Counted from the stretch's first letter, positions 439-60,264 are shown. The stretch: 64,000 nt of DNA from IMGVR_UViG_3300037725_000018:159358-223357; one strand, 5' to 3'. The notes: generated by a model not told the origin, from the sequence alone. A program made the numbers and translations.

Positions 439-466
439 GGAACCGGGCTTTATTCTCCCTGTTAAA
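439..466 (+). promoter_or_regulatory. Class B ECF-like promoter for 515..796
   Basis: GGAAC-N17-GTTAAA, then AAAGAGGGAACCCTTTT 5' hairpin. Confidence 0.65.
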
Positions 467-514
467 GCAAACGGAAAAAGAGGGAACCCTTTTCACCAAC
501 GAACCCTGTTTGCT

Positions 515-796
515 ATGAACGCCACGAAAGAAGAGATCCGCGAAAAGTTTTCTCTTCCGTCTGACAGTCGGGCAAGGAAGCTTCGGGACATGTTTTCGAA
601 GCACGTCACGTATCTGGACAAGAGCCTAAACCGGGCTTGGAAGGGTCCGGTCGAAGCGGTTGTGCCGAAAGAGAAGGCTAAAGACATGCGGGAAGCAATG
701 AGCTTCATCGGTGCTCATGTGGATAAGACCGAAAGCCTTCCGGGTGGCCGCGTTCGGCTTTACAGCCGGGGCTACTACGTTCACGTTGGGGCTTAA
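515..796 (+). CDS. Hypothetical phage protein (class B cassette inserted in family A array)
   Basis: 93 aa ORF with own promoter, 5' hairpin and terminator. Confidence 0.75.
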   Translation: MNATKEEIREKFSLPSDSRARKLRDMFSKHVTYLDKSLNRAWKGPVEAVVPKEKAKDMREAMSFIGAHVDKTESLPGGRVRLYSRGYYVHVGA

Positions 797-829
797 ATGA
801 AGCGACAGCTTCCCATTCAAACCCGCAGG

Positions 830-863
830 AAGGCCCACAGGGGGAAACCTCTTGTGGGCCTTT
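830..863 (+). terminator. Intrinsic terminator-like hairpin
   Basis: AAGGCCCACAGGGGG-AAA-CCTCTTGTGGGCCTT after 515..796. Confidence 0.7.
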
Positions 864-953
864 GCCATACCCTTTTCGGTTCCGAAAACTTCTTAGAAAC
901 AATTGTGTGGACAGGCAATATCTACCAGTAGACAAAGAAAAATAACAAAGAAA

Positions 954-1175
954 ATGATTGCAGTTATAGTCTCGACGCCAAAAGACTACGGAGAAGCTTC
1001 AAAGCTTCGGATCTATCTTTCCGTTAATGACGTTTTTAAAGAAGGAAAAAAAGACTCCAAAGAAATTCAGGTTATTTCAACCCCAAATTTCACCCGAAAG
1101 CAAAACAACCAGATTGAAGAAAAGAGTTGGTTTAAAAATATAAGGTCTAAAAAAGAACAAGTAAAAAACCTTTAA
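954..1175 (+). CDS. Family A small protein
   Basis: 73 aa, MIAVIVS (internal ATG of track ORF 903..1175). Confidence 0.75.
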   Translation: MIAVIVSTPKDYGEASKLRIYLSVNDVFKEGKKDSKEIQVISTPNFTRKQNNQIEEKSWFKNIRSKKEQVKNL

Positions 1176-1179
1176 CGGC

Positions 1180-1332
1180 ATGATCATCATACTTAGCGAA
1201 ACAGAAGAAGAAGATTATAAAGTGGAAGAAGTATTTGAATATGGCCCCGCTTCTATGTCTTGGTATCTTACAGATGATGAAGTTTCGAGAGAAGAGATTA
1301 GACACATAAAAAAAGACCTAAAAACATGGTAG
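1180..1332 (+). CDS. Family A small protein
   Basis: 50 aa, MIIILSETEEE...IRHIKKDLKTW; below track cutoff, read by hand. Confidence 0.7.
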   Translation: MIIILSETEEEDYKVEEVFEYGPASMSWYLTDDEVSREEIRHIKKDLKTW

Positions 1333-1658
1333 TTTTCTTTGAATCAAAAACGGAATTTTCAAATGCGCTTTCGAACTCTACGTCCAAAAACACACTTCTT
1401 GATCTTTCGGTTCGCGTAAACGGTGTTAAGCTTTCGTACGCGGAACACGAAAAGACATACAAAAAACATGTAAGTCCCAAATCTTTAAAGTTAGCGCAGA
1501 AGCAGGGGACGGTATTTGGGCTTTCCGACGAAAAAAAGCGGCTTACTCTGTCCGGTGGAAAGCTTGTATACAATTCGGGTTCATTTGCACTTTCTTCTGC
1601 TTTGTTTTCAACGTTTAAGTCAATATCCGGCTCGCACAAAACTGGCAATATAATATAA
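1326..1658 (+). CDS. Family A small protein (VNG subfamily)
   Basis: 110 aa, MVVFFES...VRVNG. Confidence 0.75.
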   Translation: MVVFFESKTEFSNALSNSTSKNTLLDLSVRVNGVKLSYAEHEKTYKKHVSPKSLKLAQKQGTVFGLSDEKKRLTLSGGKLVYNSGSFALSSALFSTFKSISGSHKTGNII

Positions 1659-1674
1659 CACAAGTTGAAAACCC

Positions 1675-1845
1675 ATGATTATCGTTGTGTCTGAAAATGA
1701 AAGAGATCGAAGAAGTCTTGTTGGCTTTCCTCTTCACAACAAGGGAGGATGCAAGCACGTACTAAACACAAAGCAATCTAAAGCCGCAAACTTGAAAAAG
1801 TCTATCGTGGCTAGAATTGAAATTGTGAACTTGCACGGTTGGTAA
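1675..1845 (+). CDS. Family A small protein
   Basis: 56 aa, MIIVVSENE; read by hand. Confidence 0.7.
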   Translation: MIIVVSENERDRRSLVGFPLHNKGGCKHVLNTKQSKAANLKKSIVARIEIVNLHGW

Positions 1846-1851
1846 AAGAAG

Positions 1852-2031
1852 ATGATTTTCATAATGTACGAAACAAAAAAAGAGCAGAGGCGTTCTTACA
1901 TTAACGCAAATGGAGAAGGTTTTTGTTTTTTTGGTTGGGAGGGAATGAAACTTTTGCCGGAAACAAAACTTAAAAGAATTGTAATCGAAAGGTTCAGAGA
2001 AGCTAGAGTGAAAAATGGTCGTCATTTTTGA
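1852..2031 (+). CDS. Family A small protein
   Basis: 59 aa, MIFIMYETKKE; read by hand. Confidence 0.7.
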   Translation: MIFIMYETKKEQRRSYINANGEGFCFFGWEGMKLLPETKLKRIVIERFREARVKNGRHF

Positions 2032-2260
2032 AACAGAAAAAGAAGTCGTTGACGCAATTTCATATAAAAACGTTCCCGCAAAGTGGGAAGTCAACGGAAA
2101 ACCAGTAGAGGCAAAAGAGGTTATCGTAATGCCAAATAACCTAACAAAAAATCACTTTCCCGCCCACAAACAAATTGTGAAACGAAATCTTCACGAAAAG
2201 CAAGAAGACCTCTCGATTCTAAAAAAAGTTTGGTCGTTTGCAGCGTCAATCTTCAACTAA
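2015..2260 (+). CDS. Family A small protein (VNG subfamily)
   Basis: 81 aa, MVVIFETEKE...WEVNG. Confidence 0.8.
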   Translation: MVVIFETEKEVVDAISYKNVPAKWEVNGKPVEAKEVIVMPNNLTKNHFPAHKQIVKRNLHEKQEDLSILKKVWSFAASIFN

Positions 2261-2262
2261 AA

Positions 2263-2442
2263 ATGCCCATGCCCATAATCGTCGGAAAAAGAAAGGAGCT
2301 TAAAGAGGCTTACGTTATCCCAATGACACAAAGACAGTCCCGGACCTACAAATGGTTTAAGCATTCTGAAGTAAGAAATATGGGAACTAAGATGGTCAAG
2401 GAGTTAATCAGAGAAATATCATCTGAACTTAAAAGAAATTGA
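2263..2442 (+). CDS. Family A small protein (atypical start)
   Basis: 59 aa, MPMPIIVG...MVKELIREISSELKRN. Confidence 0.65.
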   Translation: MPMPIIVGKRKELKEAYVIPMTQRQSRTYKWFKHSEVRNMGTKMVKELIREISSELKRN

Positions 2443-2452
2443 AACCCAAGTT

Positions 2453-2638
2453 ATGTTCATTGTATTTGAAAGCGAAAAAGAGCGAAAAGAAGCTGTAAAC
2501 ACCGACAAATCATCGGTTCGTTCATTTTGGATTGAGGAAGAAATGATTTCAATTAAAAACGTCATGCGGGTTTACAGTTGGGACAACATGCGGCTCGGAA
2601 AGTCTCAGGCACGCAAAAAAGTAGCACATAGGCTTTAA
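2453..2638 (+). CDS. Family A small protein
   Basis: 61 aa, MFIVFESEKE. Confidence 0.8.
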   Translation: MFIVFESEKERKEAVNTDKSSVRSFWIEEEMISIKNVMRVYSWDNMRLGKSQARKKVAHRL

Positions 2639-2645
2639 TAAGGAT

Positions 2646-2831
2646 ATGCAAATTATATTCGAGACGTACCTAAAATTTCAAGCTCACTCCACGCCGGAGC
2701 TTAGTTTTTCCGGCTTCAAGGTCGGGGAAGCAAGAGACGTGCCTTCCCGTTGCATCCATGTTAAAAACACAGACACGATCCGGTCTATAAAAAAGCGGCT
2801 TCGAAAAGGGCTCGCGCAAGGCAAAAATTGA
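2646..2831 (+). CDS. Family A small protein
   Basis: 61 aa, MQIIFET...IRSIKKRLRKGL. Confidence 0.8.
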   Translation: MQIIFETYLKFQAHSTPELSFSGFKVGEARDVPSRCIHVKNTDTIRSIKKRLRKGLAQGKN

Positions 2832-2919
2832 CTTCCATATCGAGACCGGGTAGAGAAACGATTTCAAAAGACCTACCCCCCTTCAAATAACAAGTTCAAT
2901 TGACCCCCCCCCCTTAAGG

Positions 2920-3081
2920 ATGGTTTTGATTGCACATTCGCATAAAGAACTTCAAATTGCAGTTAGAATGTCACACGACCTTCTTCTTGTTCACGATTCG
3001 GTTTTCTTTCCCCGCTCTTCATACTGGATTCGAAACAAAGAAAATATGCATCGGTTCATAAAAAGTGATTTGAAAGTGTAA
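2920..3081 (+). CDS. Family A small protein
   Basis: 53 aa, MVLIAHSHKE...HRFIKSDLKV; read by hand. Confidence 0.65.
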   Translation: MVLIAHSHKELQIAVRMSHDLLLVHDSVFFPRSSYWIRNKENMHRFIKSDLKV

Positions 3082-3098
3082 AGATTAGTAGTAACATC

Positions 3099-3308
3099 AT
3101 GGTTGTTGTATATACAAAGAAAACATTAAGGAAGATAGAATCAAAGGTCGTGGAAAAGTTTTTAGAAGAAGATGAGGACGCTTTTATTATGCCAGTGGAG
3201 CTTCCGGTGTTGAACTACAAGACGCAGCGGAGCATTGTCCAAAACGCGATTCAGTCTACGTCGTGGGAAGAATACACAAACCCTGAAATGCGACCTCAAA
3301 ACATATGA
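3099..3308 (+). CDS. Family A small protein
   Basis: 69 aa, MVVVYTK. Confidence 0.75.
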   Translation: MVVVYTKKTLRKIESKVVEKFLEEDEDAFIMPVELPVLNYKTQRSIVQNAIQSTSWEEYTNPEMRPQNI

Positions 3309-3487
3309 TCATTATCCTTCCAGAAAACGAAAAAGAACACGGGGCAGCTCTTTGGCGTCGGTGGGACAAAAATCCCAAGATACTTGTCCTTCCATACCGA
3401 ATGTCAAGTTTTCAAGGAGAAGGTGGGGCAGCCGTTTTCGGGAGGGTAAGGTTTCACGTAAAAGACAAACTAAGTAAAAAAGCATGA
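3305..3487 (+). CDS. Family A small protein
   Basis: 60 aa, MIIILPENEKE; ATGA overlap with upstream gene. Confidence 0.8.
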   Translation: MIIILPENEKEHGAALWRRWDKNPKILVLPYRMSSFQGEGGAAVFGRVRFHVKDKLSKKA

Positions 3488-3678
3488 TGGTTTTGATCTT
3501 TCAAGATGAAGAGTAAAGAAGTAAGGTTCTTGAGCAGCCCGGAGCAACCTTTTTTTCAAAAGTCAAATGCCACGACAAGAACATTAGAATTAAAGAAACG
3601 TGTGAATTTCTTCAAGGCAGGCTAAGAAACTCTAAAAAGCTGTCTAAACTTTTGAGGCTAAAAATTAAAACGGCTTAA
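3484..3678 (+). pseudogene. Family A member with in-frame stop
   Basis: MMVLIFQDEE*RSKVLEQ...KLLRLKIKTA*; single TAA at 3514-3516, frame otherwise open to 3678. Confidence 0.65.
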
Positions 3679-3686
3679 TAGAAGAA

Positions 3687-3881
3687 ATGCAAATCATCTT
3701 CAACGACATAGACGAAATCAAATCGTGCATCGAAGAGTCAATATATGCCAACTCGAAAACGCGCACCCTTAGAGGAACAAATGTTTCCATAAACGTTTGG
3801 GACATGTGGCACACCGATTATGTGCGAGCTAATGGAGCAGAGGTTATAAAAAAAGTTAGATCCAAATTGAAAGAAGAATGA
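3687..3881 (+). CDS. Family A small protein
   Basis: 64 aa, MQIIFNDIDE...VIKKVRSKLKEE. Confidence 0.8.
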   Translation: MQIIFNDIDEIKSCIEESIYANSKTRTLRGTNVSINVWDMWHTDYVRANGAEVIKKVRSKLKEE

Positions 3882-4093
3882 TTATATACTTCGAACGTGG
3901 CGAAAAACAAAAAAGCCACCTGCGCGGCCTTTTTGGAAGGCAAAAGAAAACAGACCTTTCCTTCCACTTCGGAAAGATTGAAGACACAGACTGCTATTGG
4001 TATAACATTTCCGGAAACACAAAACGAAAAAGACCGGGTGAAGGTCTTAGAAGCAGAGAGCACTTAAAATTCATAACCGAAATTGCAATTTGA
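3878..4093 (+). CDS. Family A small protein
   Basis: 71 aa, MIIYFER; ATGA overlap. Confidence 0.8.
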   Translation: MIIYFERGEKQKSHLRGLFGRQKKTDLSFHFGKIEDTDCYWYNISGNTKRKRPGEGLRSREHLKFITEIAI

Positions 4094-4100
4094 AAACCCC

Positions 4101-4286
4101 ATGCATATACTTTTTGAGGACACACGCGAATTTAAAAAATACGACGGGACGTTTTATTACTTCAACGGTGGGCCGGAAATTTACGCGCATGAAGCAAGTG
4201 TTTTGACATACAGACGCAAAAAACTTACATTAGACAAACAAAAAAGAAAGCGCGTAAAAAAGAGGCTCAAAAAAAACATCGCATAA
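4101..4286 (+). CDS. Family A small protein
   Basis: 61 aa, MHILFEDTRE...RVKKRLKKNIA. Confidence 0.75.
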   Translation: MHILFEDTREFKKYDGTFYYFNGGPEIYAHEASVLTYRRKKLTLDKQKRKRVKKRLKKNIA

Positions 4287-4305
4287 CGGCGGCAGCAGGC
4301 AAAAA

Positions 4306-4491
4306 ATGGTTATTATAGTATCGGAAGAAAACACAAAACAAAAAACGTGGACGTTTTACGATAAAAATTTTTTTTCAGATCACAAGACGTGGTTTATCCC
4401 CACGGAGTCTTATGAAATAGAGCAAGGAGAAAGGTTCCCAAGCGTCCGGAGAAAAGCGAATACATCCCATATCATCAAGTCTCTTTCTTAA
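4306..4491 (+). CDS. Family A small protein
   Basis: 61 aa, MVIIVSEE. Confidence 0.8.
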   Translation: MVIIVSEENTKQKTWTFYDKNFFSDHKTWFIPTESYEIEQGERFPSVRRKANTSHIIKSLS

Positions 4492-4495
4492 ACCA

Positions 4496-4663
4496 GTGAT
4501 TATAGCAATTCCAGAATCCAAATTTGAGTGGCAAGTTTTCTATCAAGACTTACCTTTTAAAGATTTAAAAGTTGTCCCGGAACCCCGAATTTACGATAAC
4601 TACATAGAAATGTCAAGAAAAAGAACGGTTCTTTCGATAATAAAGGAACAAACAACTTCTTGA
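4496..4663 (+). CDS. Family A small protein (GTG start)
   Basis: 55 aa, MIIAIPES; read by hand. Confidence 0.65.
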   Translation: MIIAIPESKFEWQVFYQDLPFKDLKVVPEPRIYDNYIEMSRKRTVLSIIKEQTTS

Positions 4664-4665
4664 AA

Positions 4666-4725
4666 ATGATCATCACGATTCCAGCGGAGAATAATAAAGA
4701 AAGAGAAAAATGGGAATGCTTGTAA
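4666..4725 (+). pseudogene. Truncated family A stub
   Basis: 19 aa MIITIPAENNKEREKWECL*, overlapped by next member. Confidence 0.5.
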
Positions 4726-4892
4726 TCTTTGAAAATTTTGAAGAAATGGACAAAGTTTCAAAACCGAAGGGAAAGTACGAGCTTGTCGGGGAAGCAAAAG
4801 TCCCCGCGTTCAACGTCCACGTCAAAAGAAACTTCAAACGCCCAAGCGTGTTTAGAAGAGAAATGAAAATAGCTGTGTTCTCTAAGTTGTAA
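4716..4892 (+). CDS. Family A small protein
   Basis: 58 aa, MLVIFENFEE. Confidence 0.75.
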   Translation: MLVIFENFEEMDKVSKPKGKYELVGEAKVPAFNVHVKRNFKRPSVFRREMKIAVFSKL

Positions 4893-5431
4893 GAGCAAAA
4901 GCAATAAGACAGCCATCCCGACCACTTTTCCTTGGACATGATACAGACAAAGAGTATTACAACATCCGGTCACACAAACCCGAAAGCGGTTTATTAGTAG
5001 GTGGTTTGCATATAAACGGGGAAAAGCTTTCTAGCCATTGGATATATGTCAGGTGAGTGAATGGAAGAAAGCCCCACACAAGGCAAATAAAACCTCACGT
5101 GAGGTAAAATATGGTTTTTATATTGAGACCGGGGCGAAAACCATTTCATTTTTACCGGGGGTACCGATTATAGCAAGTTATTTTTACCCCCACCCCCCTG
5201 TAGAATGTACACAGCCTTGTAGTAGATGGTAGAATGTACATGTGAATTCAAAAAGCCGTTTCAAAACGAAATGCAAAAGCTTCAATTCAAGACAAAGCAC
5301 ATGTAGTTTTTACCGTTTGCAGTTTTGGCATGGAATTTGCCTTCTGCGTCAAAACAAGACGTGTAGCTTTTACAAGGGAGGTGGGCGTTGGCATACAGTT
5401 TGCTTTAAAAAACCATAAACAGATAATTGGC

Positions 5432-5593
5432 ATGATTGTTGTTATCGAAAGAAGAGAAGACATAAACGGCTCCAGCCTTAAATTTTTTGATTCTGAAATA
5501 AGGCTAAAAGTAGGCAGGGCAGTTGTTCGTAGGTGGTGCCCGTCTGGGTGGCCTTTACGATACAAAAGAGAGTACATCCGAAAGCATATTTGA
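5432..5593 (+). CDS. Family A small protein
   Basis: 53 aa, MIVVIER...REYIRKHI (internal ATG of 5330..5593). Confidence 0.7.
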   Translation: MIVVIERREDINGSSLKFFDSEIRLKVGRAVVRRWCPSGWPLRYKREYIRKHI

Positions 5594-5612
5594 AAACCAG
5601 TTGAAAAAAGAT

Positions 5613-5786
5613 ATGATCGTTATCCTTGTTGAAGAGAAGGCCAATTCTTTTAGCGTCGAAGACTTTGAAAAAGAAGTTGCAGTTATCCCAAGTGCAAAGG
5701 CGTACGTCTCTCTTTCGGTTCTTTCAAATGTTCAAGGGCTAAAGATGCGGAGGCGACATGTGGATAATGCCATTCGAAAGCTTTAA
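5613..5786 (+). CDS. Family A small protein
   Basis: 57 aa, MIVILVEE (internal ATG of 5523..5786). Confidence 0.7.
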   Translation: MIVILVEEKANSFSVEDFEKEVAVIPSAKAYVSLSVLSNVQGLKMRRRHVDNAIRKL

Positions 5787-5859
5787 TAGAAGCCTCTGTC
5801 TTTTCTTCTAAGAAGTTTTTCATGTGTGCCCTTGCGGTGGGATAGGCAAATAAAAAAAA

Positions 5860-6585: not shown

Positions 6586-6613
6586 ATAAACAAGCGCCCC
6601 CCAAGGGTGTTCC
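6586..6613 (-). promoter_or_regulatory. Class B ECF-like promoter
   Basis: GGAAC-N17-GTTTAT. Confidence 0.65.
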
Positions 6614-6656
6614 CAAGGAAGACGCTCGTTTTGGTTTTTCAATTGCAACTTCCTTT

Positions 6657-6867: not shown

Positions 6868-6895
6868 GTAAACCCACAGCCTACGAGTATGTTTC
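6868..6895 (-). promoter_or_regulatory. Class B ECF-like promoter
   Basis: GAAAC-N17-GTTTAC, with a TTCA box 11 nt upstream. Confidence 0.6.
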
Positions 6896-7220: not shown

Positions 7221-7289
7221 ACAAAAGGGAAGGGGAACTGCTCCCCTTCCCGTGTGAAGATTTGTTTAACTAGTGAAACTTAGCTTCAG

Positions 7290-7870: not shown

Positions 7871-7898
7871 TTAAAAAGGTGTTGGAAGATGAAGTTCC
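7871..7898 (-). promoter_or_regulatory. Class B ECF-like promoter
   Basis: GGAAC-N17-TTTTAA preceded by four TTCAC boxes (7898-7933). Confidence 0.6.
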
Positions 7899-11226: not shown

Positions 11227-11427
11227 ATGGTTGTCTATTTTGAAAAAAGAACGGAGTTTCTAAACCATTCACAATTCACAAATCGATTTCGAACAACAAT
11301 AACCGTTAACGGGCAGGTTCTTGTCAATTGCGAATATATCGTCTCGCCCAATAAAAAAGCGCCCCTTCAAATAAAAGAAAAGGACGTTCCTTTGTATCCG
11401 GGAACGCGCCTTGTTTTCGTTTTTTAA
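11227..11427 (+). CDS. Family A small protein (VNG subfamily)
   Basis: 66 aa, MVVYFEKRTE...TVNG. Confidence 0.8.
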   Translation: MVVYFEKRTEFLNHSQFTNRFRTTITVNGQVLVNCEYIVSPNKKAPLQIKEKDVPLYPGTRLVFVF

Positions 11428-11509
11428 ACGCTTGCCCAAAGCTTTGCAGAAGGCGCAAGACGGGTTTTCGGCTTTCGGTCTTTAAGGTACCCTTTACATA
11501 CAGAGAAAA

Positions 11510-11543
11510 CCCCACACAAGGCGTCCATTTGCCTCATGTGGGG
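11510..11543. terminator. Repeated bidirectional terminator-like hairpin (CCCCACACAAGGC family)
   Basis: CCCCACACAAGGC..GCCTCATGTGGGG at a convergent junction. Confidence 0.7.
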
Positions 11544-11571
11544 CCTCTTTTGTTTATGTGTTGGGGGGGGA

Positions 11572-12051
11572 TTACAAAAGCCTTCTTAGGGCTCGAAGAA
11601 GCGCCCCGCGAAAGTAGTTTCCGCTTTGCCGGGGGTCTCCGTCTCCGTAGGATCGGTACTTAACAAGCCCCCTACGCCGAAGTGCCCTCTTTGTTGCCGT
11701 TGGGTTTGCTGAAGTGACAAGCGGTTTGGTCGGGTCGTCTGCGTGAATGACGGTTGCGCGAATCACCTCCTTCATGGTTTCGGAAAGCTCTTCGGTGGAC
11801 TGAAGGCGTGCAAGCTCGACCATTGACTTGCAATCCTCCGGGTCCCACATCCGATACCAACCGTCCGCTAAGTTGCGTGCAGGGTTAATGTCAAGAAACT
11901 CCGCAAGCCGATCAAGAGCCTCCTTGACCTCCTTTTCGCTTATGTTAACACCATCGGCATTTAAAGCCATGTAAACGTCATGGGCGGTGAAGGCTTGCCC
12001 GTCCTCGTATTCGTTTTTCACCGTACTTGCAGTTTTCAAAATTACGTCCAT
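11572..12051 (-). CDS. Hypothetical protein, possible winged-helix DNA-binding domains
   Basis: 159 aa; FTAHDVY..L...EVKEALDRL and KRALRRRGLV patterns resemble wHTH. Confidence 0.65.
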   Translation of the reverse strand: MDVILKTASTVKNEYEDGQAFTAHDVYMALNADGVNISEKEVKEALDRLAEFLDINPARNLADGWYRMWDPEDCKSMVELARLQSTEELSETMKEVIRATVIHADDPTKPLVTSANPTATKRALRRRGLVKYRSYGDGDPRQSGNYFRGALLRALRRLL

Positions 12052-12103
12052 CGTCTCTTTTGTTTGTTTGTTGGAAAGGACTTCCCTCTCTGTTTCGTGT
12101 GCT

Positions 12104-12131
12104 TAAAATAGAAAAGCCCGTGGACAGTTCC
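12104..12131 (-). promoter_or_regulatory. Class B ECF-like promoter in hairpin
   Basis: GGAAC-N17-ATTTTA; upstream TTAAC..CTTCAC box. Confidence 0.65.
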
Positions 12132-12167
12132 ACGGGCCGTGTGAAGCGTTTGTTAACAAGTGATTTT

Positions 12168-12428
12168 TTAAGAAAGGTCCCACGTGATCGATTCAACCGC
12201 ATCAGCCTTATTTCGGACACTTTCCAAATCCGAATGCACTTGAATCATCTTTTTGCGCTGGAAGGCAAGACCGGCCTTCCCATCAATTTGAATGTACGCC
12301 ATTGCGACGTTTGCGGTTTTTTCCGGGTCGTAGTATTCGGGGTCCCCGTAAGAGTGTCTTCCTCGCTCTCGAAGCCGGGACTCGATCTCTTCTTGAATTT
12401 TCGAAAGCGCGTCTTCTACGATGCTCAT
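12168..12428 (-). CDS. Hypothetical phage protein
   Basis: 86 aa ORF. Confidence 0.75.
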   Translation of the reverse strand: MSIVEDALSKIQEEIESRLRERGRHSYGDPEYYDPEKTANVAMAYIQIDGKAGLAFQRKKMIQVHSDLESVRNKADAVESITWDLS

Positions 12429-12461
12429 GGGCTTTTGGTTTTGGTTTGTGAAAATTCGGCT

Positions 12462-12671
12462 TTAAGAGAAAGGATCTCGAAGATAGTCGTACCGGATATC
12501 GAAGTATGCCATTTTCTTCGTGTCAGTTACCCCGACGATGTTTCCGGTATCTTCGTCCTTTACGTGCCACTCGCTTAGGCTTTTTCGGACTTCAAAAGAC
12601 CGACCGTCTTCTCGTTTTGCGCGGTAGCGGCCCCGCTCGATCTTGCTTGTTTCAATTTCAAACGTGTCCAT
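12462..12671 (-). CDS. Hypothetical phage protein (class B)
   Basis: 69 aa ORF. Confidence 0.75.
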   Translation of the reverse strand: MDTFEIETSKIERGRYRAKREDGRSFEVRKSLSEWHVKDEDTGNIVGVTDTKKMAYFDIRYDYLRDPFS

Positions 12672-12724
12672 TTTTCAAGCCTTGTTTTATCGTTTGAAAA
12701 CGACCTCCCCTTTCTTGCGTGTAT

Positions 12725-12752
12725 ATAAACTGGTGGCCCACTGGACGGTTCC
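12725..12752 (-). promoter_or_regulatory. Class B ECF-like promoter in hairpin
   Basis: GGAAC-N17-GTTTAT; CTTCA 11 nt upstream. Confidence 0.7.
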
Positions 12753-12795
12753 AGTGGGCCACATGAAGATTCGGTAAAATAAAGCCCGTAGCCTG

Positions 12796-13002
12796 TCACA
12801 TCTTTCGGGAAGGGTTTCGGCTCTTTTCAAGGGTGTGCCGGGTAAACCCGTTTAGCCACCACTTTCGAAACGTTGAGCCTATCGCATACGGGCAATCGCT
12901 TACCCACCCGCCTTCCTTTTTCGCAGCATATCCTTCCTTGCGAATTTCTTCTTTTAGGTCCGAATGAGGGAGAGGCTCCATGTTTCCAACAAGGTCTTTC
13001 AT
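12796..13002 (-). CDS. Rmf/CrpP-fold-like small protein
   Basis: EGYAAKKEGGWVSDCPYAIGSTFRKWWLNGF matches the ribosome modulation factor pattern GYxA..G....CPY......R..WL.GW. Confidence 0.6.
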   Translation of the reverse strand: MKDLVGNMEPLPHSDLKEEIRKEGYAAKKEGGWVSDCPYAIGSTFRKWWLNGFTRHTLEKSRNPSRKM

Positions 13003-13043
13003 CGTCTTTTTGGGTTGGTTGGTAAAGGTCTTGTGGATTTGAT

Positions 13044-13277
13044 TTAGCTGAAGTTTCGGGCAAGAACCATCATGGCAGCTTTCATAAGCTGCTTTTCGGT
13101 CACGTCCGCTTTAGTATGCACAGACAGGTACTTGTACGACGAGCCGGGGCGAACCCCAAGGGTCACGTCAAAATCCATGTAGTGACCGGAGGACTCCAAG
13201 AGGTCTTTAACTTTTTCCCCCTGACCCGGAAGAATGTACCCAAGGTTTGCAGTCGTGCGGCTACCAGAAGTTTCCAT
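13044..13277 (-). CDS. Hypothetical phage protein (class B)
   Basis: 77 aa ORF. Confidence 0.7.
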   Translation of the reverse strand: METSGSRTTANLGYILPGQGEKVKDLLESSGHYMDFDVTLGVRPGSSYKYLSVHTKADVTEKQLMKAAMMVLARNFS

Positions 13278-13311
13278 TGCGTTGGGAAGCTTTTAAGTTC
13301 AACAGGCGGCT

Positions 13312-13339
13312 TTGAAAAAAACGCCGGAAGGCGGGTTTC
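13312..13339 (-). promoter_or_regulatory. Class B ECF-like promoter in hairpin
   Basis: GAAAC-N17-TTTCAA. Confidence 0.5.
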
Positions 13340-13377
13340 ACCCCCCGGCGCGTTTGGCTACTTTTGATTTTGGATTA

Positions 13378-13602
13378 TTAGAAGAACTGTTCGTCAAGCC
13401 ACTCCTCAACGATGTGGAATTCTTCGTCGGTGATCTTCTCACCGTCCTTTTCCCCATCGGAGGGGTAGTGCTCGATCCAAACGGCCCGTTCGACCTCGAC
13501 GGACGTTTCCGCAGGGGAACGCCGCGTTGCCTTCATGTGGCTAACGCTCATGTCAACTTCGATCACGCCGTCTTCGTGATGAACCGATTCGGTAACTGTC
13601 AT
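13378..13602 (-). CDS. Acidic hypothetical protein (class B)
   Basis: 74 aa ORF. Confidence 0.75.
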   Translation of the reverse strand: MTVTESVHHEDGVIEVDMSVSHMKATRRSPAETSVEVERAVWIEHYPSDGEKDGEKITDEEFHIVEEWLDEQFF

Positions 13603-13666
13603 GGCTGTAAGCTGCTTTTGTTTGAAAGATCAAACCCGAAGGGGCTTTCCCCCTTCTTGCGCTACT

Positions 13667-13694
13667 TTACACACGCGAAAAACGGATTGGTTCC
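13667..13694 (-). promoter_or_regulatory. Class B ECF-like promoter
   Basis: GGAAC-N17-GTGTAA; TTCAC..CTTCAC upstream. Confidence 0.7.
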
Positions 13695-13736
13695 CGGCCA
13701 AAGTGTGAAGCCTTTGTGAAGCCAAGCCCCGGCCCG

Positions 13737-14018
13737 TTAAAGAAGCTCACCGAGCCGGATCGGTTCCGGGGAAGAGCGGAGGGCTTCCCGCTCGCGCTTG
13801 CGGGACCGAAGCGCGGACATGCGCTTTTTGATGTTGCGCCTCTGCTCTTTGGCTTGCCGCTCTTTTTCGCGGCGAATGGCTTCTTTATACTCCGCTTTGG
13901 AGTCGTAAGAAGTCCAGTAGCGGCCCAAAGGCCCGTCCCACTCGATCCGCAGGCCATCAAAGTCGCTAAAGCGGGTGGAAGCGCGAACGGCTTTTTGGGT
14001 AGGCTCGCAAATATTCAT
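13737..14018 (-). CDS. Hypothetical protein with basic coiled coil (class B)
   Basis: 93 aa ORF. Confidence 0.7.
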   Translation of the reverse strand: MNICEPTQKAVRASTRFSDFDGLRIEWDGPLGRYWTSYDSKAEYKEAIRREKERQAKEQRRNIKKRMSALRSRKREREALRSSPEPIRLGELL

Positions 14019-14056
14019 TGTCTTTGGGGGATTGGTTCCCTCTCTTTCGCAATACC

Positions 14057-14084
14057 TTACACGCGGGGAAAGCGGGTCTGTTCC
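14057..14084 (-). promoter_or_regulatory. Class B ECF-like promoter
   Basis: GGAAC-N17-GTGTAA; CTTCA 11 nt upstream. Confidence 0.7.
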
Positions 14085-14503: not shown

Positions 14504-14558
14504 AGCAGCTTTAACTTTTTTGTTTGCTTGAAGGGGCCTTTCCCCGTCTTGCGTGTGT

Positions 14559-14586
14559 GTAAACCCACCGAAACCGGGGTTGTTTC
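14559..14586 (-). promoter_or_regulatory. Class B ECF-like promoter in hairpin
   Basis: GAAAC-N17-GTTTAC; CTTCAC..CTTCAC upstream. Confidence 0.7.
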
Positions 14587-14634
14587 GGTTTTGAATGTGA
14601 AGCGTCTGTGAAGGAAGGTTTCTTGGCAGACATA

Positions 14635-14671: not shown

Positions 14672-14690
14672 GGTTCTGTGTGGCTGACTT

Positions 14691-15038: not shown

Positions 15039-15066
15039 GTAAATGCGCTTTTATAGGAGCAGTTCC
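15039..15066 (-). promoter_or_regulatory. Class B ECF-like promoter
   Basis: GGAAC-N17-ATTTAC; CTTCA 11 nt upstream. Confidence 0.7.
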
Positions 15067-41663: not shown

Positions 41664-41691
41664 TTAAATGACAAAGGGCCGGGTTGGTTCC
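41664..41691 (-). promoter_or_regulatory. Class B ECF-like promoter in hairpin
   Basis: GGAAC-N17-ATTTAA; CTTAAC..CTTCA upstream. Confidence 0.7.
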
Positions 41692-42527: not shown

Positions 42528-42555
42528 TTTAATGTCCGTTAGGCACGTTTGTTTC
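42528..42555 (-). promoter_or_regulatory. Class B ECF-like promoter
   Basis: GAAAC-N17-ATTAAA; CTTCA 11 nt upstream. Confidence 0.65.
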
Positions 42556-43185: not shown

Positions 43186-43213
43186 TTAAATGGAAAACAG
43201 CCAAGCTAGTTTC
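43186..43213 (-). promoter_or_regulatory. Class B ECF-like promoter
   Basis: GAAAC-N17-ATTTAA; CTTAAC..CTTCAC upstream. Confidence 0.65.
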
Positions 43214-43843: not shown

Positions 43844-43871
43844 TCAAATAAGAAAAGCCGGGGTTGGTTCC
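43844..43871 (-). promoter_or_regulatory. Class B ECF-like promoter in hairpin
   Basis: GGAAC-N17-ATTTGA; TTCAC..CTTCAC upstream. Confidence 0.7.
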
Positions 43872-44475: not shown

Positions 44476-44862
44476 CTACATTACACGCCGTATCCACCGG
44501 ACAGGTTTCAAAAGATTGTGTGAAACGCGGTTCCATCCGGTAAAGTGCTCTTCTTTAACGTCAACAGTCTTTTCCTTCCACTTCACGTCTCCACGTACAG
44601 AACAGATCCCGTCGTAAAGGTCTTTTGCTTCTTTTCTTCCAGACACGTTGTACTTCTTTTTGGCGTACCAGAAGTATTTTGGCGACGTAGACTGGAAAAC
44701 ATACTTTCTTTTTTGGTGAAGAAAAAGGGAGTGATATTCATAAGTGTCTGTTTCGTAAACCGCTAAGAAGTCTCCGGTTTCGCTAACGTAAAGAAAATCT
44801 TTTCTGGACCGAAGTTTCTGATCAAGCTGATTTCTTTTTCTTTTCACCACGTCTCTTTTCAT
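44476..44862 (-). CDS. Hypothetical basic protein
   Basis: 128 aa ORF. Confidence 0.6.
   Translation of the reverse strand: MKRDVVKRKRNQLDQKLRSRKDFLYVSETGDFLAVYETDTYEYHSLFLHQKRKYVFQSTSPKYFWYAKKKYNVSGRKEAKDLYDGICSVRGDVKWKEKTVDVKEEHFTGWNRVSHNLLKPVRWIRRVM
44481..44509 (-). promoter_or_regulatory. Class B ECF-like promoter (18-nt spacer)
   Basis: GAAAC-N18-GTGTAA with CAGGAAACCC leader. Confidence 0.5.
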
Positions 44863-57640: not shown

Positions 57641-58093
57641 CTAGCCATAAATCACTTTGCTTTTGGTTCCGTGAGTTTCGCAATGCTTTAGGGTGTTCTT
57701 GGTTCCACGGGACTTTTCATCGTCTCCACGCGCCTCTTCTGGCATAAGGGCAATAACAATTCCTCCAGCTTCGGAAACCACCTTTGCGATTTCTTCGTTT
57801 CGCTCGAAGTAATTTGTGGCCTTGTACTCCTGCCCGTAGTATTCCGGGTCATGTGCAAAGTATTCTTCATATTCGTAATGGGCCGGGGCATACTCTGTGT
57901 AGGTTACGTCTTCGAACTTCTCTTCATTTTGAAGAAGCCACTTCACCATACGGTCTACGCCTTTTGGATTCCCACCGGAAACAATTTCTAGATTTTCAGC
58001 ACCGAACTTGCTAACGGCTTTTTCAATGACTGTCCGGATCTTGTCCCATCCGTGGTCCCAACTTCTACTTCCAACAATTCCAATCTTTTTCAT
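57641..58093 (-). CDS. SLOG/YspA-like (DUF2493-type) nucleotide-binding protein
   Basis: KIGIVGSRS...IVSGG.PKGVD...RNEEI...SRGTKNT. Confidence 0.8.
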   Translation of the reverse strand: MKKIGIVGSRSWDHGWDKIRTVIEKAVSKFGAENLEIVSGGNPKGVDRMVKWLLQNEEKFEDVTYTEYAPAHYEYEEYFAHDPEYYGQEYKATNYFERNEEIAKVVSEAGGIVIALMPEEARGDDEKSRGTKNTLKHCETHGTKSKVIYG

Positions 58094-58136
58094 AATAGTA
58101 GTAATTGTAAACTGTTTTTTGATTCGTTTAATTCTT

Positions 58137-58577
58137 TCAAACTCCAAGGAAACCGTCCTCAGAGCTATTGTTTTCGCTGTTTAGTATAAACTCGTCCAAT
58201 TCAACGCCCGAAAGAACGTCTTGTTCCGAAAGAGAGATAATGCACTCGTAAGCCCCAACGCATTCTCCAACCGGGCTTTCAACGTCTTCGTCCCAAACCA
58301 TATTTTGAATTTCTTTACGGCTTGGGAGAGAAAGCCGATATCCTCCCACATCGATAGAGCTTAATCCGTCTTCTTTCTCTTTGAATTTGAAATCTCTGTC
58401 AGGGTACCGTTTTGTCAATACCCACATAATCGCATAGTCCGGGTTATGGATAAAGTCTATGTTGTTTGCGGCTCTACTTTCCGAATCTGTAAGTTCAAAG
58501 TTCCCCCGCTCAACTAAGTTTTGAAACGAAAGAGTGCTTTGATCTAGTACCGCTTGTATAAGTTCATTTGGGGTCAT
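58137..58577 (-). CDS. Acidic hypothetical protein
   Basis: 146 aa ORF. Confidence 0.7.
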   Translation of the reverse strand: MTPNELIQAVLDQSTLSFQNLVERGNFELTDSESRAANNIDFIHNPDYAIMWVLTKRYPDRDFKFKEKEDGLSSIDVGGYRLSLPSRKEIQNMVWDEDVESPVGECVGAYECIISLSEQDVLSGVELDEFILNSENNSSEDGFLGV

Positions 58578-58640
58578 TGATATATTTGCTACGTTAGTTT
58601 GTGGTTCATCTACTCATAGATATTAAAAACGTAGCCCTCT

Positions 58641-59120
58641 TTACTGTTCCAACTTGCCCCCAACCATTCTCTTTTTTACCTCTCTGTGCAAATCTTTGAA
58701 AGTGTGCCCTCTCTTTTCATACACCTTTTCTCTTTCAAATATCTTGTCTATTTTCTTGCTCAGATCACAACTTCTTTTCAACCGCACAACACTTCCATCT
58801 TTAAGTTTAACATAATACGTATCGCTAATAAAGAGTGGAAAAATGTCAAAAGACTCCGGATAAGCTACCCTTGCCACATACTTTACATTGTCGGTGCGAT
58901 AAAAATGGATCATTTTTTCCTCGGCACATACAGCGTAGTAACCATCTAAAGAAACGTAACCCGGATCTCTTGACAGCCCATAATTTTTTAGGTCTCTTTC
59001 AAGAGAATCGCATTTAGAATATGCCTTACCGTAAACTTGTAAGACAGAAACTTTTTCAAAAACGGGAATAAGAATTGCCAACAACAAAAAGTTGCCAACG
59101 AAAATTAAAAGCAGATCCAT
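58641..59120 (-). CDS. Membrane-anchored protein, paralog of 59131..59613
   Basis: N-terminal TM helix; shared LQ..G...SK, AE..I.FY..D, FP..F...Y....KD. Confidence 0.7.
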   Translation of the reverse strand: MDLLLIFVGNFLLLAILIPVFEKVSVLQVYGKAYSKCDSLERDLKNYGLSRDPGYVSLDGYYAVCAEEKMIHFYRTDNVKYVARVAYPESFDIFPLFISDTYYVKLKDGSVVRLKRSCDLSKKIDKIFEREKVYEKRGHTFKDLHREVKKRMVGGKLEQ

Positions 59121-59130
59121 TGAAATTTAC

Positions 59131-59613
59131 TTAAACGTTATCTTTTTTCCTTCGCTCGATTTCCCGCACGATTTCTGAAAACGAGAGTTCCGTATCAAGT
59201 TCACCATTTTTCGGCCTATGTGTTCCGTTAATAACCGATGAAAAATACCTGTGTAGTTCGCTAAACGGAAAAACAACTGCGCTTTTTTTGCCAAAGTCTT
59301 TTGTTAAGATCACGTAAGAGTGTGGAAAAAACATAAGTGGTGGAAAAAAGCCCCGGCGCATAGCTACACAAAGAGCCTCTTTATCCTCCCCGTAGAAGTA
59401 TATTGCATCTTCTGCAACAATATAGTCCGGGACTCCCTTTTTGCCAGATACCTCTAAGGGGCCTTTGCCATTCTCAATGTATCCCACGACCTCCGGGCGC
59501 TCATCCTTACTAAAAACAAGTCCCCCAAGAATTTGTGCCTGCAAAACCAACTCTATGAAATACAAGGCAACCACGCCTCCAACGGCAATTGAAAAAAGAA
59601 AAATCCAAATCAT
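59131..59613 (-). CDS. Membrane-anchored protein, paralog of 58641..59120
   Basis: N-terminal TM helix and shared motifs. Confidence 0.7.
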   Translation of the reverse strand: MIWIFLFSIAVGGVVALYFIELVLQAQILGGLVFSKDERPEVVGYIENGKGPLEVSGKKGVPDYIVAEDAIYFYGEDKEALCVAMRRGFFPPLMFFPHSYVILTKDFGKKSAVVFPFSELHRYFSSVINGTHRPKNGELDTELSFSEIVREIERRKKDNV

Positions 59614-59628
59614 TATTTTAATTTGAAA

Positions 59629-60141
59629 TTAAAGGGCCTGTTCTACAATTTCGTCGTGTTTCATTTCGTCGATTTTGCTTTTCTCCCCGAAAACATCCCC
59701 ACTTAGTTCTCCAGCATAGTCAAACGCACAAATTCTTCCGTCTACAACACTTTTCCCGACCTGCCTGCAATCGATGTTTTCAGCCCAAGCCGGGACCATT
59801 GATTCAAATCCTGTTTCTTTGTCCGGTTCAGAAAACGGGATCACCCGCTCCATCATAAGAACGTCAATTCCGTTCATCGAAAGCGTTCTACAGGCGGCAA
59901 GCCTATCCCGGTTCTCTGTTTGGTTTTCGTAGTTTTCTCTTTCGTCAGAGTTTTGGTGCCTTGCGGGGTAATCAATGGGAAGCTTCAAAACATAGTCAGT
60001 TCCTTCTTTAGCCCAAACTATTCTCCCCATTCCGGAGCCAATCCGAACAAACCCAAGCTCTTTAAGTCGCTTTTTACACTCCGAAACTTTTCTGTTGTAC
60101 AACTCCGCTTCGTCGCTAAATACCTCTGACACGTCGTTCAT
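59629..60141 (-). CDS. Minimal protein-kinase-like (phosphotransferase fold) protein
   Basis: RIGSGMGRIVW Gly-loop, YVLKLP Lys, N..E helix, LMMERV, D...QVG...FDY. Confidence 0.65.
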   Translation of the reverse strand: MNDVSEVFSDEAELYNRKVSECKKRLKELGFVRIGSGMGRIVWAKEGTDYVLKLPIDYPARHQNSDERENYENQTENRDRLAACRTLSMNGIDVLMMERVIPFSEPDKETGFESMVPAWAENIDCRQVGKSVVDGRICAFDYAGELSGDVFGEKSKIDEMKHDEIVEQAL

Positions 60142-60177
60142 AACAGGCTTTGGGGGTTTGACTTCAAAACTCGATAT

Positions 60178-60264
60178 TTACACGCAAAAAAGACAAAGCT
60201 TGTTCCCGGTTCACACACGCTTAATTTTTAAAACCGGGAACACACTTTTAAAAAGCCTGTTCAA
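60178..60264. promoter_or_regulatory. Divergent pair of class B promoters
   Basis: Minus: GGAAC(60202-06)-N18-GTGTAA; plus: GGAAC(60237-41)-N17-GTTCAA. Confidence 0.55.

What the first reader, a model, noticed from the sequence alone, without database searches (positions are those of the whole stretch)
439..60264. A second cassette system: 22 ECF-sigma-like promoters (GRAAC-N17-RTKTAM), each driving one to a few small genes
Seen: 19 copies with a 17-nt spacer and 3 with an 18-nt spacer, aligned by hand (e.g. 6586, 6868, 12104, 12725, 13667, 14057, 14559, 15039, 41664, 42528, 43186, 43844). Most are followed by a short purine-rich 5' hairpin (GGGGAAACCCC-like) and an A/C-rich leader without SD. 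Established: GGAAC-N16/17 promoters are typical of sigma-E/ECF factors, and T4-like phages carry promoter-stem-loop (PeSL) units thought to help shuffle accessory genes. Inference: early/host-takeover genes are read by a host ECF sigma or a phage-encoded ECF-like sigma not in this window.
Basis: partly seen in the sequence, partly recalled or inferred. Interest (0 to 1): 0.72.

Follow-up and report, generated by a model that had tools for sequence, protein, structure and literature searches.

The report
ECF-type promoter cassettes in T4-like phage
A large uncultured T4-like phage from tidal-flat mud puts the same ~120-base promoter(-terminator) module, whose core looks like an ECF-sigma promoter rather than a housekeeping one, in front of about 45 small early-type gene cassettes, and these cassettes come and go as units between strains.

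Summary
GRAAC-N17-RTKTAM occurs 11 times in the window against 1.1 expected. The 17-nt spacing is specific: 28 genome-wide against 2-6 for other spacings. The motif is 13-15 times denser in intergenic than in coding DNA. A weight-matrix scan finds 18 credible sites in the window and about 43-49 in the 223-kb genome. Nearly all are co-oriented with a start codon 30-58 nt past the presumed +1.

The motif is the core of a longer module. It has two upstream TCACA/TTCACA repeats, often a GC hairpin plus T-run that encloses GGAAC, and a purine-rich 5' hairpin. An A/C-rich leader without Shine-Dalgarno follows.

The same module stands before orthologous genes in two related phages (263 and 484 kb). 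More distant relatives have Bacteroidota sigma-A-type promoters on their cassettes. In three metagenomes an ~88%-identical strain lacks exactly one cassette (630 bp).

So this is a PeSL-like promoter-terminator cassette system with an ECF-type promoter. No canonical ECF sigma is encoded. The only sigma-like gene, outside the window, is a two-domain relative of T4 gp55. No RNA data were listed, so start sites are unmapped.

The parts
439..466 (+). ECF-like promoter core (GGAAC-N17-GTTAAA); heads a run of at least 12 tiny + strand genes
   Evidence: PWM 32.5 bits, intergenic, ATG 42 nt after presumed +1
6586..6613 (-). promoter core; GGAAC lies inside a terminator-like hairpin (6597-6620)
   Evidence: (dG -26.5)
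6868..6895 (-). promoter core GAAAC-N17-GTTTAC, drives a 56-aa ORF
7871..7898 (-). weaker promoter core (GGAAC-N17-TTTTAA) with three upstream TTCACA-type repeats; divergent partner of 7936
   Evidence: 12.5 bits
7936..7963 (+). promoter core with inverted upstream repeats (GTGAAG); next called + gene is far away (669 nt)
12103..12131 (-). promoter core, 18-nt spacer; GGAAC in terminator hairpin 12115-12138; drives a 159-aa ORF
12725..12752 (-). promoter core; GGAAC in 13-bp hairpin 12733-12762; drives ORFs of 69 and 86 aa
   Evidence: (dG -27.3)
12165..12794 (-). one whole cassette (promoter 12752 plus two ORFs) that is absent from a co-occurring ~88%-identical strain
   Evidence: joint 12164/12795 on one contig in each of 3 runs, 13 nt replaced; breakpoints lie just after the stop codons at 12796-12798 and 12168-12170
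13667..13694 (-). promoter core GGAAC-N17-GTGTAA; leader hairpin GGGGG-AAA-GCCCC (dG -14.6)
14057..14084 (-). promoter core; 93-aa ORF
14559..14586 (-). promoter core; GAAAC in a hairpin; leader hairpin dG -10.6
15039..15066 (-). promoter core; its leader is >=85% identical over ~33 nt to that of the site at genome 158423
   Evidence: cross-mapping loose ends at 15005/15037
41664..41691 (-). best-scoring promoter core (50.8 bits); GGAAC in hairpin ~41671-41701 followed by TTT
   Evidence: dG -22.9
42528..42555 (-). promoter core GAAAC-N17-ATTAAA; drives a 157-aa ORF whose LR756508 orthologue also has an ECF-like site upstream
43186..43213 (-). promoter core; shares the 16-17-nt upstream run TTAACAAACGCTTCAC with sites 12131 and 41691
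43844..43871 (-). promoter core; GGAAC in hairpin ~43851-43881 plus T run
   Evidence: dG -20.3
44481..44509 (-). promoter core, 18-nt spacer; followed by a 14-codon mini-ORF, then an 81-aa ORF
60178..60206 (-). promoter core, 18-nt spacer; heads a long run of 150-300-aa genes
60237..60264 (+). divergent partner of 60206 (GGAAC-N17-GTTCAA); 90-aa ORF
   Evidence: 15.2 bits

Best explanation
What it is. The motif is the core of a ~110-130-nt composite regulatory module. This distant T4-like phage places the module in front of its pre-late genes: ORFan cassettes and some replication, repair and nucleotide genes.

Anatomy, 5' to 3':
- two TCACA/TTCACA repeats about 11 nt apart, in either orientation;
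- in a quarter to a third of copies, a GC-rich hairpin plus T run that ends the upstream unit and encloses the -35;
- GGAAC (-35), a strict 17-nt (rarely 18-nt) spacer, then (c)RTKTAM (-10);
- a conserved T-G about 6-7 nt downstream, the presumed -1/+1;
- a purine-rich block that often pairs with a following pyrimidine run;
- a C/A-rich leader (CACCAAC) without Shine-Dalgarno, then ATG at +30 to +58.

Shown: the anatomy, its statistics, its conservation in three phages, its retention before orthologous genes, and that a cassette is an indel unit.

Inferred:
1. It is a promoter for bacterial core RNA polymerase carrying a group-4 (ECF)-type sigma. The bipartite fixed-spacer geometry and the GGAAC/GTT signature argue for this.
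2. This class fires first and also drives the phage's gp55-like sigma gene. That sigma then reads the separate late class, CTATATATA.
3. Repeated modules act as portable promoter-terminator joints at which cassettes are gained and lost, as proposed for PeSLs.

- a host sigma of ECF type already in the cell at infection: about 0.45;
- the phage's own two-domain gp55-like sigma: about 0.30;
- another unrecognised phage or injected factor, possibly acting through the TCACA repeats: about 0.15;
- not a promoter: at most 0.10.
For: Statistics. Enrichment and spacing specificity. Of the 41 sites found by the weight-matrix scan, 38 are intergenic. All but a few have a co-oriented start 30-58 nt after the presumed +1. 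The strict motif is 13-15 times denser in intergenic than in coding DNA.

Conservation.
- The same extended anatomy occurs in G001 (263 kb, capsid protein 64% identical) and in LR756508 (484 kb).
- ECF-like sites are retained upstream of orthologues of about 10 of 15 testable genes, at 30-60% protein identity.

ECF resemblance. Published ECF consensus sequences quoted in bioRxiv 10.1101/172254 are M. tuberculosis sigma-H (C/G)GGAAc-N17-(C/G)GTT and sigma-E GG(A/G)(A/C)C-N18-(C/G)GTTg.

Other promoter types excluded.
- Sigma-70-like sites are not enriched: 9 against 8.5 expected.
- The Bacteroidota sigma-A pattern is not enriched in G000 or G001. It does drive the cassettes of relatives immuto and Mel-JY01.

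Structure around the core.
- Terminator-like hairpins enclose GGAAC (27 terminator-like sites against 16.0 +/- 3.6 expected).
- A separate late class, CTATATATA, stands before structural genes.
- A core site of 21.5 bits lies 30 nt before the sigma-like gene.

Cassette behaviour.
- One 630-bp cassette is an indel in three metagenomes.
- Ten cassette ORFs have no PHROG match.
- Different modules share exact runs of up to 18 nt.

The phage sigma. Its model has two four-helix domains. The best match is T4 gp55 (Z 10.9), and the N-terminal domain superposes on sigma-E sigma2 at 2.3-3.2 A.
Against: - No transcription start site is mapped. No RNA run was listed for this DNA.
- No canonical ECF sigma is found in the phage, and no second sigma-like paralogue.
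- The phage sigma-like protein is also present in relatives without this promoter class. The ECF-like site before its gene is not conserved in G001 or LR756508.
- The host is unknown. 401 sampled Bacteroidota genomes show no excess of GGAAC-N17-GTKTAA over the control. That argues against a housekeeping promoter in those genomes and says little about a small ECF regulon.
- I know of no precedent for a phage relying on a host ECF sigma for roughly 45 first-wave promoters (my own knowledge, not searched exhaustively).
- The terminator overlap is present in only about 11 of 41 sites.
- The leader hairpin is weak.
- Only one cassette indel was seen.
Confidence: 0.6

Rival explanations
1. The phage's own two-domain gp55-like sigma (genome 74431-75204, outside the window) reads these promoters. 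Its sigma2-like domain would read the -10 and its C-terminal four-helix domain would read GGAAC. It would be positively autoregulated, as ECF sigmas are. It might also read the late CTATATATA class, which has no -35.
For: - It is the only sigma-like protein in the genome.
- It has two helical domains joined by a linker, the ECF-like architecture. The PDB matches are almost all sigma factors.
- One homologue is named 'sigma24 family' by JGI.
- In G000 its gene sits 30 nt behind a 21.5-bit core site.
- Phage-encoded sigmas are a common way to run phage promoter classes (my own knowledge).
Against: - Its best structural match is the late sigma gp55.
- The family is conserved in immuto, Mel-JY01 and RM378, which lack this promoter class.
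- The site before its gene is absent in G001 and LR756508.
- No other pre-late promoter class was found that could make the first molecules.
- The promoter consensus is nearly identical in three phages whose sigma-like proteins are only 45-53% identical.
Confidence: 0.3
2. The host housekeeping sigma reads them with help from an activator or sigma-appropriation factor that binds the TCACA repeats or GGAAC. This would be an analogue of T4 middle promoters (MotA/AsiA).
For: - Direct TCACA/TTCACA repeats with ~11-nt phasing lie upstream of the -35, usable in either orientation. That looks like a protein-binding site.
- In T4-like phages some PeSL-like units are built on middle promoters ('PmSL', PMC4122927).
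Against: - The -10 region fits neither TAnnnT nor the Bacteroidota TAnnTTTG.
- T at the would-be -7 position is poorly conserved.
- No MotA- or AsiA-like protein, nor any other candidate, emerged among the proteins shared only by the three phages that carry this promoter class.
Confidence: 0.12
3. The elements are not promoters. They would be repeated recombination, packaging or RNA-processing sites, or relics of a mobile element, that merely sit between genes.
For: - Different elements share exact runs of up to 18 nt.
- One indel is bounded by them.
- No start sites are mapped.
Against: - The strict two-block geometry with a 17-nt spacer is what sigma factors read.
- Orientation always follows the downstream gene, and the distance to the ATG is constant.
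- Only the two blocks and the +1 region are conserved, not the spacer.
- Sites are retained before orthologues while the flanks diverge.
- No Rfam family matches.
Confidence: 0.06

Closest known systems
PeSL / PmSL elements of T4-like phages (Arbiol et al. 2010, PMC2839356; Comeau et al. 2014, PMC4122927)
   Same: - Both are composite terminator stem-loop plus promoter plus leader modules, repeated between small ORFan genes in plastic regions of a T4-type genome.
- The consensus is lineage-specific.
- The modules are associated with cassette-sized indels between close relatives.
   Different: - The promoter is not sigma-70-like (TTGACA-N17-TATAAT) and has no Mot box. It is GGAAC-N17-RTKTAM.
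- The stem-loop, where present, encloses the -35 instead of lying upstream of it.
- Upstream there are TCACA repeats instead of an AT-rich tract.
- There is no Shine-Dalgarno; the leader is C/A-rich.
- The phage is far outside the classical T4-likes (capsid protein 27-33% identical to other listed gp23-type hits such as the Stenotrophomonas phages; T4 itself was not compared).
ECF (group 4) sigma-dependent promoters, e.g. M. tuberculosis sigma-H/sigma-E and S. coelicolor sigma-R as quoted in bioRxiv 10.1101/172254; E. coli sigma-E and alphaproteobacterial EcfG from my own knowledge
   Same: - An AAC-containing -35 (GGAAC).
- A 16-18-nt spacer measured the same way.
- A G/A-T-T/G start of the -10.
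- Start about 6-7 nt downstream (presumed here).
   Different: - The -10 continues as TAA/TAC, and its third base is T or G rather than C or T.
- About 45 copies in a phage rather than a small stress regulon.
- No cognate canonical ECF sigma or anti-sigma pair was identified.
Cassette promoters of relatives: Flavobacterium phage immuto (AGTTGC-N20-TATATTTAGGTAT) and Mel-JY01 (CTTGCAT-N~18-GTAAATTTGTA)
   Same: Same phage clade, and the same layout: a near-identical promoter-leader module before each small gene, with no classical SD in immuto.
   Different: Those promoters fit the Bacteroidota primary-sigma consensus TTG-N17-23-TAnnTTTG. The window's promoters do not.
T4 gp55-dependent late promoters (TATAAATA)
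   Same: The phage has such a class (CTATATATA) and a gp55-like sigma.
   Different: That is a separate motif, found before structural genes and lacking a -35. It is not the finding.

Membership tests
PeSL (promoter-early stem-loop) elements | Repeated intergenic module in front of small, poorly conserved ORFs of a T4-type phage | tested here: met
   Capsid, portal, terminase, sheath and baseplate proteins are T4-type. Sites precede ORFs of 52-170 aa that have no PHROG match.
PeSL (promoter-early stem-loop) elements | Sigma-70-like early promoter (TTGACA-like -35, TATAAT-like -10) | tested here: not met
   The consensus is GGAAC-N17-RTKTAM. Sigma-70-like sites number 9 against 8.5 expected.
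PeSL (promoter-early stem-loop) elements | Stem-loop (terminator) adjoining the promoter | tested here: inconclusive
   A strong hairpin plus T run is present in about 11 of 41 sites, and it encloses the -35 rather than preceding it. It is absent or weak in the rest.
PeSL (promoter-early stem-loop) elements | Shine-Dalgarno and start codon at the 3' end of the module | tested here: not met
   The start codon lies at a fixed distance, but there is no SD: 6 of 191 genes have an SD-like 4-mer.
PeSL (promoter-early stem-loop) elements | Indels or replacements between close relatives bounded by the modules | tested here: met
   One case: the 630-bp cassette 12165-12794 is missing from an ~88%-identical strain in 3 runs. 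Only 5 kb was examined.
ECF-sigma-dependent promoter | -35 with GGAAC/AAC and -10 beginning (C)GT, 16-18 nt apart | tested here: met
   Position weights, spacing specificity, and the published consensus sequences.
ECF-sigma-dependent promoter | A cognate ECF sigma (sigma2 + sigma4, Pfam Sigma70_r2/r4_2) available to read it | tested here: inconclusive
   There is no canonical hit in the phage. A divergent two-domain gp55-like sigma exists. The host is unknown.
ECF-sigma-dependent promoter | Transcription starts about 6-8 nt downstream of the -10 | not testable with these tools
   No RNA run was listed. Only a conserved T-G at the expected place is seen.
Bacteroidota primary-sigma promoter (TTG-N17-23-TAnnTTTG) | -33 TTG and -7 TAnnTTTG upstream of genes | tested here: not met
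   Not enriched in G000 (21 against 9-19 in shuffles). It is clearly present in immuto and Mel-JY01 cassettes.
T4 middle (MotA-dependent) promoter | Mot box TGCTT at -30 plus a sigma-70 -10 | tested here: not met
   Neither element appears in the position weights.

The most novel reading that the evidence does not exclude
A small clade of large T4-like phages (223-484 kb) has replaced the host-primary-sigma early promoters used by its relatives. In their place stands a single ECF-type promoter class that runs the whole pre-late programme. That class would be read either by hijacking a host ECF sigma (infection-triggered envelope stress would then switch the phage on) or by a gp55-derived phage sigma that has kept or gained a -35-reading domain. 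The second option would link T4 gp55 to two-domain group-4 sigmas.
Probability: 0.35. Interest if true: 0.78.

Novelty: new variant of a known kind. Interest (0 to 1): 0.56.

Why it matters
PeSLs are the one concrete mechanism proposed for how T4-type phages shuffle accessory genes. They have been described only with sigma-70-type (or Mot-box) promoters, in phages of Proteobacteria.

Here the same modular logic appears in a very distant branch, with a different promoter chemistry. Relatives in the same branch use yet another type, the Bacteroidota sigma-A type. That suggests the cassette architecture is ancient and general, while the promoter plugged into it follows whatever polymerase holoenzyme the phage exploits.

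If it is the gp55-like protein, it would show a gp55 relative that reads a -35.

In practice, the motif gives a ready marker for annotating early genes and transcription units in this uncultured clade.

Tried and rejected
- RNA evidence. No RNA run was listed for the region, so start sites could not be mapped.
- Complex prediction of the sigma-like protein with a promoter duplex was not folded by the tool. It gives no evidence either way.
- Canonical sigma searches in the phage found nothing or only HTH repeats: PF04542, TIGR02937, PF08281. Those repeats belong to a GIY-YIG homing endonuclease.
- An HMM of the sigma-like family found no paralogue.
- A profile search against PDB sequences found nothing.
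- Phage RNA polymerase. The three giant ORFs in the window are YadA-like fibres.
- Proteins shared only by the three phages with this promoter class. Pfam, PHROG and Atlas gave repair, nucleotide, OB-fold-like and nucleotidyltransferase-like hits, and no sigma or activator.
- Host inference. Thymidylate synthase hits are 46-51% identical across many phyla, so they are uninformative.
- Host motif scan. 401 Bacteroidota genomes showed no excess over control. Other phyla were not scanned.
- IMG/VR scan with the composite pattern gave mostly single chance hits. Only G001 had several. Four other large contigs were not enriched.
- GGAAC-N16-18-GTT looked enriched in Mel-JY01, but the hits are coding repeats.
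- The loose ends at 15005/15037 in the read lay-out are cross-mapping of the paralogous promoter at genome 158423, not a recombinant.

Full report
**Context.** The window is the last 64 kb of a 223,357-bp IMG/VR virus record (42.8% GC, CheckV 100%). DNA runs that hold it are tidal-flat metagenomes.

- The genome encodes T4-type capsid, portal, terminase, sheath and baseplate proteins.
- Its capsid protein is 66% identical to that of the 484-kb uncultured phage LR756508 and 64% to a 263-kb IMG/VR contig (G001). It is 52% identical to 'Microcystis' phage Mel-JY01, 48% to Flavobacterium phage immuto and 38% to Rhodothermus phage RM378.
- Almost no gene has a Shine-Dalgarno: 6 of 191. The bases before ATG (purine at -3, T at -1) resemble those in the Flavobacterium phage.
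- So the host probably initiates translation the Bacteroidota way, but its identity is unknown.

- The strict pattern GRAAC-N17-RTKTAM occurs 11 times in the window against 1.13 expected.
- Genome-wide it occurs 28 times with a 17-nt spacer, against 2-6 for spacers of 14-16, 19 or 20 nt.
- An iterated weight matrix converged on 41-42 sites above every shuffle.
- A looser core scan gives 82 sites against 7-17 in shuffles. Of these, 49 are intergenic and 43 have a co-oriented start codon 10-90 nt downstream.
- Strict sites are 13-15 times denser in intergenic than in coding DNA. The ratio is 45 in G001 and 11 in LR756508.
- I accept 18 window sites.

- Upstream of GGAAC by about 10 nt lies (c)TTCACA, and 11 nt further up a second TCACA. 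In some sites, and often in G001, the repeats are inverted (GTGAAG).
- In about 11 of 41 sites GGAAC forms the 5' arm or loop of a GC-rich hairpin (dG -15 to -27 kcal/mol) followed by a T run. This looks like an intrinsic terminator for the upstream unit that overlaps the -35.
- The terminator scan finds these hairpins at 6597-6620, 12115-12138 and 12733-12762.
- After RTKTAM come about 4 variable bases and then a conserved T-G (1.3 bits). That is where a start site 6-7 nt from the -10 would fall.
- Next comes a purine-rich block (81% purine at +7..+18), often paired with a following pyrimidine run. Leader MFE is -3.6 against -2.4 kcal/mol for shuffles, p = 0.0008, and 24 of 41 leaders reach -3 or lower.
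- Then comes a C/A-rich leader (64% A+C), and ATG at +30 to +58.

**What the sites drive.**

- In the window, 15 of 18 sites are followed by one to three ORFs of 52-170 aa before the next site.
- Sites 439(+), 41691(-) and 60206(-) head longer runs.
- Ten cassette ORFs have no PHROG match.
- Elsewhere in the genome the same sites precede a helicase, an SprT-like protein, a MoxR-like ATPase, an RNA-binding (Ro-like) protein and others.
- Structural genes carry a different signal, CTATATATA followed by (T)GTGAA. It has no -35 and resembles the T4 late promoter.
- Sigma-70-like sites are at chance level.

**Conservation.**

- G001 (48.7% GC) has 26 core hits with the same upstream repeats and a CACCAACCA leader.
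- LR756508 (39.6% GC) has the same module.
- For 15 genes driven by these sites in G000 that have orthologues in G001 or LR756508, about 10 keep an ECF-like site upstream of at least one orthologue. Protein identity there is only 30-60%.
- By contrast, immuto has about 20 cassettes with AGTTGC-N20-TATATTTAGGTAT, and Mel-JY01 has CTTGCAT-N~18-GTAAATTTGTA.
- Those two fit the Bacteroidota/Flavobacterium RpoD consensus TTG-N17-23-TAnnTTTG quoted in bioRxiv 10.1101/172254.
- Neither of those phages has the GGAAC class.
- So the cassette architecture is shared by the clade, while the promoter differs between sub-clades.

**Cassette mobility.** I laid contigs of four tidal-flat runs on window 11300-16300.

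- In three runs, a contig about 12% divergent from the window joins 12164 to 12795 and skips 630 bp, with 13 replaced bases.
- The missing piece is promoter 12752 plus its two ORFs.
- The breakpoints fall directly after the stop codons of the flanking genes, at the 5' edges of two successive modules.
- Different modules share exact runs of up to 18 nt. 24 pairs share 12 nt or more, against 2 among random controls.
- This is what the PeSL model predicts (PMC4122927). It is one event in 5 kb, so it is suggestive rather than a rate.

**Who reads the promoter?** The core matches ECF consensus sequences such as (C/G)GGAAc-N17-(C/G)GTT.

- The phage has no canonical ECF sigma and no polymerase-like giant ORF.
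- Weak region-2 hits in LR756508 and Mel-JY01 led to a conserved 257-aa protein at genome 74431-75204. It has no Pfam or PHROG family but at least 497 metagenomic homologues.
- Its AlphaFold model (pLDDT 77) has two four-helix domains joined by a disordered linker.
- Foldseek hits are almost all sigma factors.
- The second-look aligner ranks T4 gp55 first (Z 10.9, residues 28-151). It superposes the N-terminal domain on E. coli sigma-E sigma2 at 2.3-3.2 A.
- So the phage has a gp55-related sigma with an extra C-terminal domain.

*Points favouring it as the late sigma only:*
- the gp55 match;
- the existence of a T4-like late promoter class;
- its presence in relatives that lack the GGAAC class.

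- its two-domain layout;
- the 21.5-bit site 30 nt before its gene in G000, though that site is not conserved in G001 or LR756508.

*Other considerations:*
- No other pre-late promoter class was found, so the GGAAC class must fire first. That favours a factor already in the cell, a host sigma of ECF type.
- The near-identical consensus in three phages whose sigma-like proteins are 45-53% identical points the same way.
- 401 sampled Bacteroidota genomes show no excess of the motif. That rules out a housekeeping role there and says nothing about a small regulon.
- Proteins shared only by the three GGAAC-class phages include no recognisable sigma or activator.
My split is host ECF-type sigma 0.45, phage gp55-like sigma 0.30, other phage factor 0.15, not a promoter 0.10 or less.

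**Comparison and verdict.**

- Functionally these are PeSL-like promoter-terminator cassettes.
- As a family member they fail two PeSL features, the sigma-70-type promoter and the SD, and they only partly meet the stem-loop feature.
- As ECF promoters they meet the sequence definition, but the cognate sigma and the start site are untested.
- I class the finding as a new variant of a known kind. It is of moderate to good interest, and higher if either unusual reader is confirmed.

Noticed in passing
window ~24574, 38328, 39541, 40704 (- strand); genome-wide 47 sites: A second promoter-like class, C-TATATATA followed 2-3 nt later by (T)GTGAA, stands before structural genes (fibres, baseplate, capsid). 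It has no -35 and resembles the T4 late promoter. G001 uses CTATTTAA-like variants.
   Followed up: partly
genome 74431-75204 (-), outside the window (L004:14431-15204): A 257-aa two-domain sigma-like protein whose best structural match is T4 gp55. The family has at least 497 metagenomic members and no Pfam or PHROG model. It sits after a conserved 97-aa gene that overlaps it in immuto and Mel-JY01; I wondered whether that gene is a gp33 analogue but did not test this.
   Followed up: partly
Mel-JY01 (PP395634), e.g. 68.7-69.5 kb, 129-131 kb, 143 kb: This 'Microcystis phage' carries cassette promoters that fit the Bacteroidota primary-sigma consensus (TTG-N20-TAAATTTG). The recorded cyanobacterial host may deserve a second look.
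   Followed up: no
immuto (MW353176) 60-77 kb: About 20 small-gene cassettes, each preceded by a nearly invariant ~45-nt promoter/leader (AGTTGC ... TATATTTAGGTATCAATAATTAAAACA). This is a PeSL-like system with a Flavobacterium-type promoter.
   Followed up: partly
window 439-5800 (+): A run of at least 12 tiny + strand ORFs (50-110 aa) behind the single site at 439, with no internal GGAAC-type sites. I did not look for its own signals.
   Followed up: no
window 40771-40843 (-); genome 87-99 kb: One tRNA gene lies in the window (Rfam, 71 bits). A large tRNA cluster elsewhere is interleaved with small ORFs and GGAAC-type sites.
   Followed up: no
window 18626-24496 and 27797-32179 (-): ORFs of 1956 and 1460 aa carry YadA-head repeats and share a segment with each other and with G001. 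They are probably long fibres or adhesins. A GC-rich patch lies at 28-30 kb.
   Followed up: partly
window 7223-7251 (-) and downstream: A strong terminator-like hairpin (GGGAAGGGGAGCAGTTCCCCTTCCC) is followed by a (GTT)n run, inside the 819-bp gap that also holds the divergent site pair 7898(-)/7936(+).
   Followed up: no
genome 16271-17365 (-); window 17387-17740 (-): Two homing-endonuclease-like genes. The first is a GIY-YIG protein with four HTH repeats, which gave the only weak 'sigma region 4' hits. The second is an HNH protein conserved in G001.
   Followed up: partly
window 44430-44474 (-): Site 44509 is followed by a 14-codon mini-ORF that ends in a T run before the next 81-aa ORF. 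This could be a leader peptide or simply a degraded cassette.
   Followed up: no
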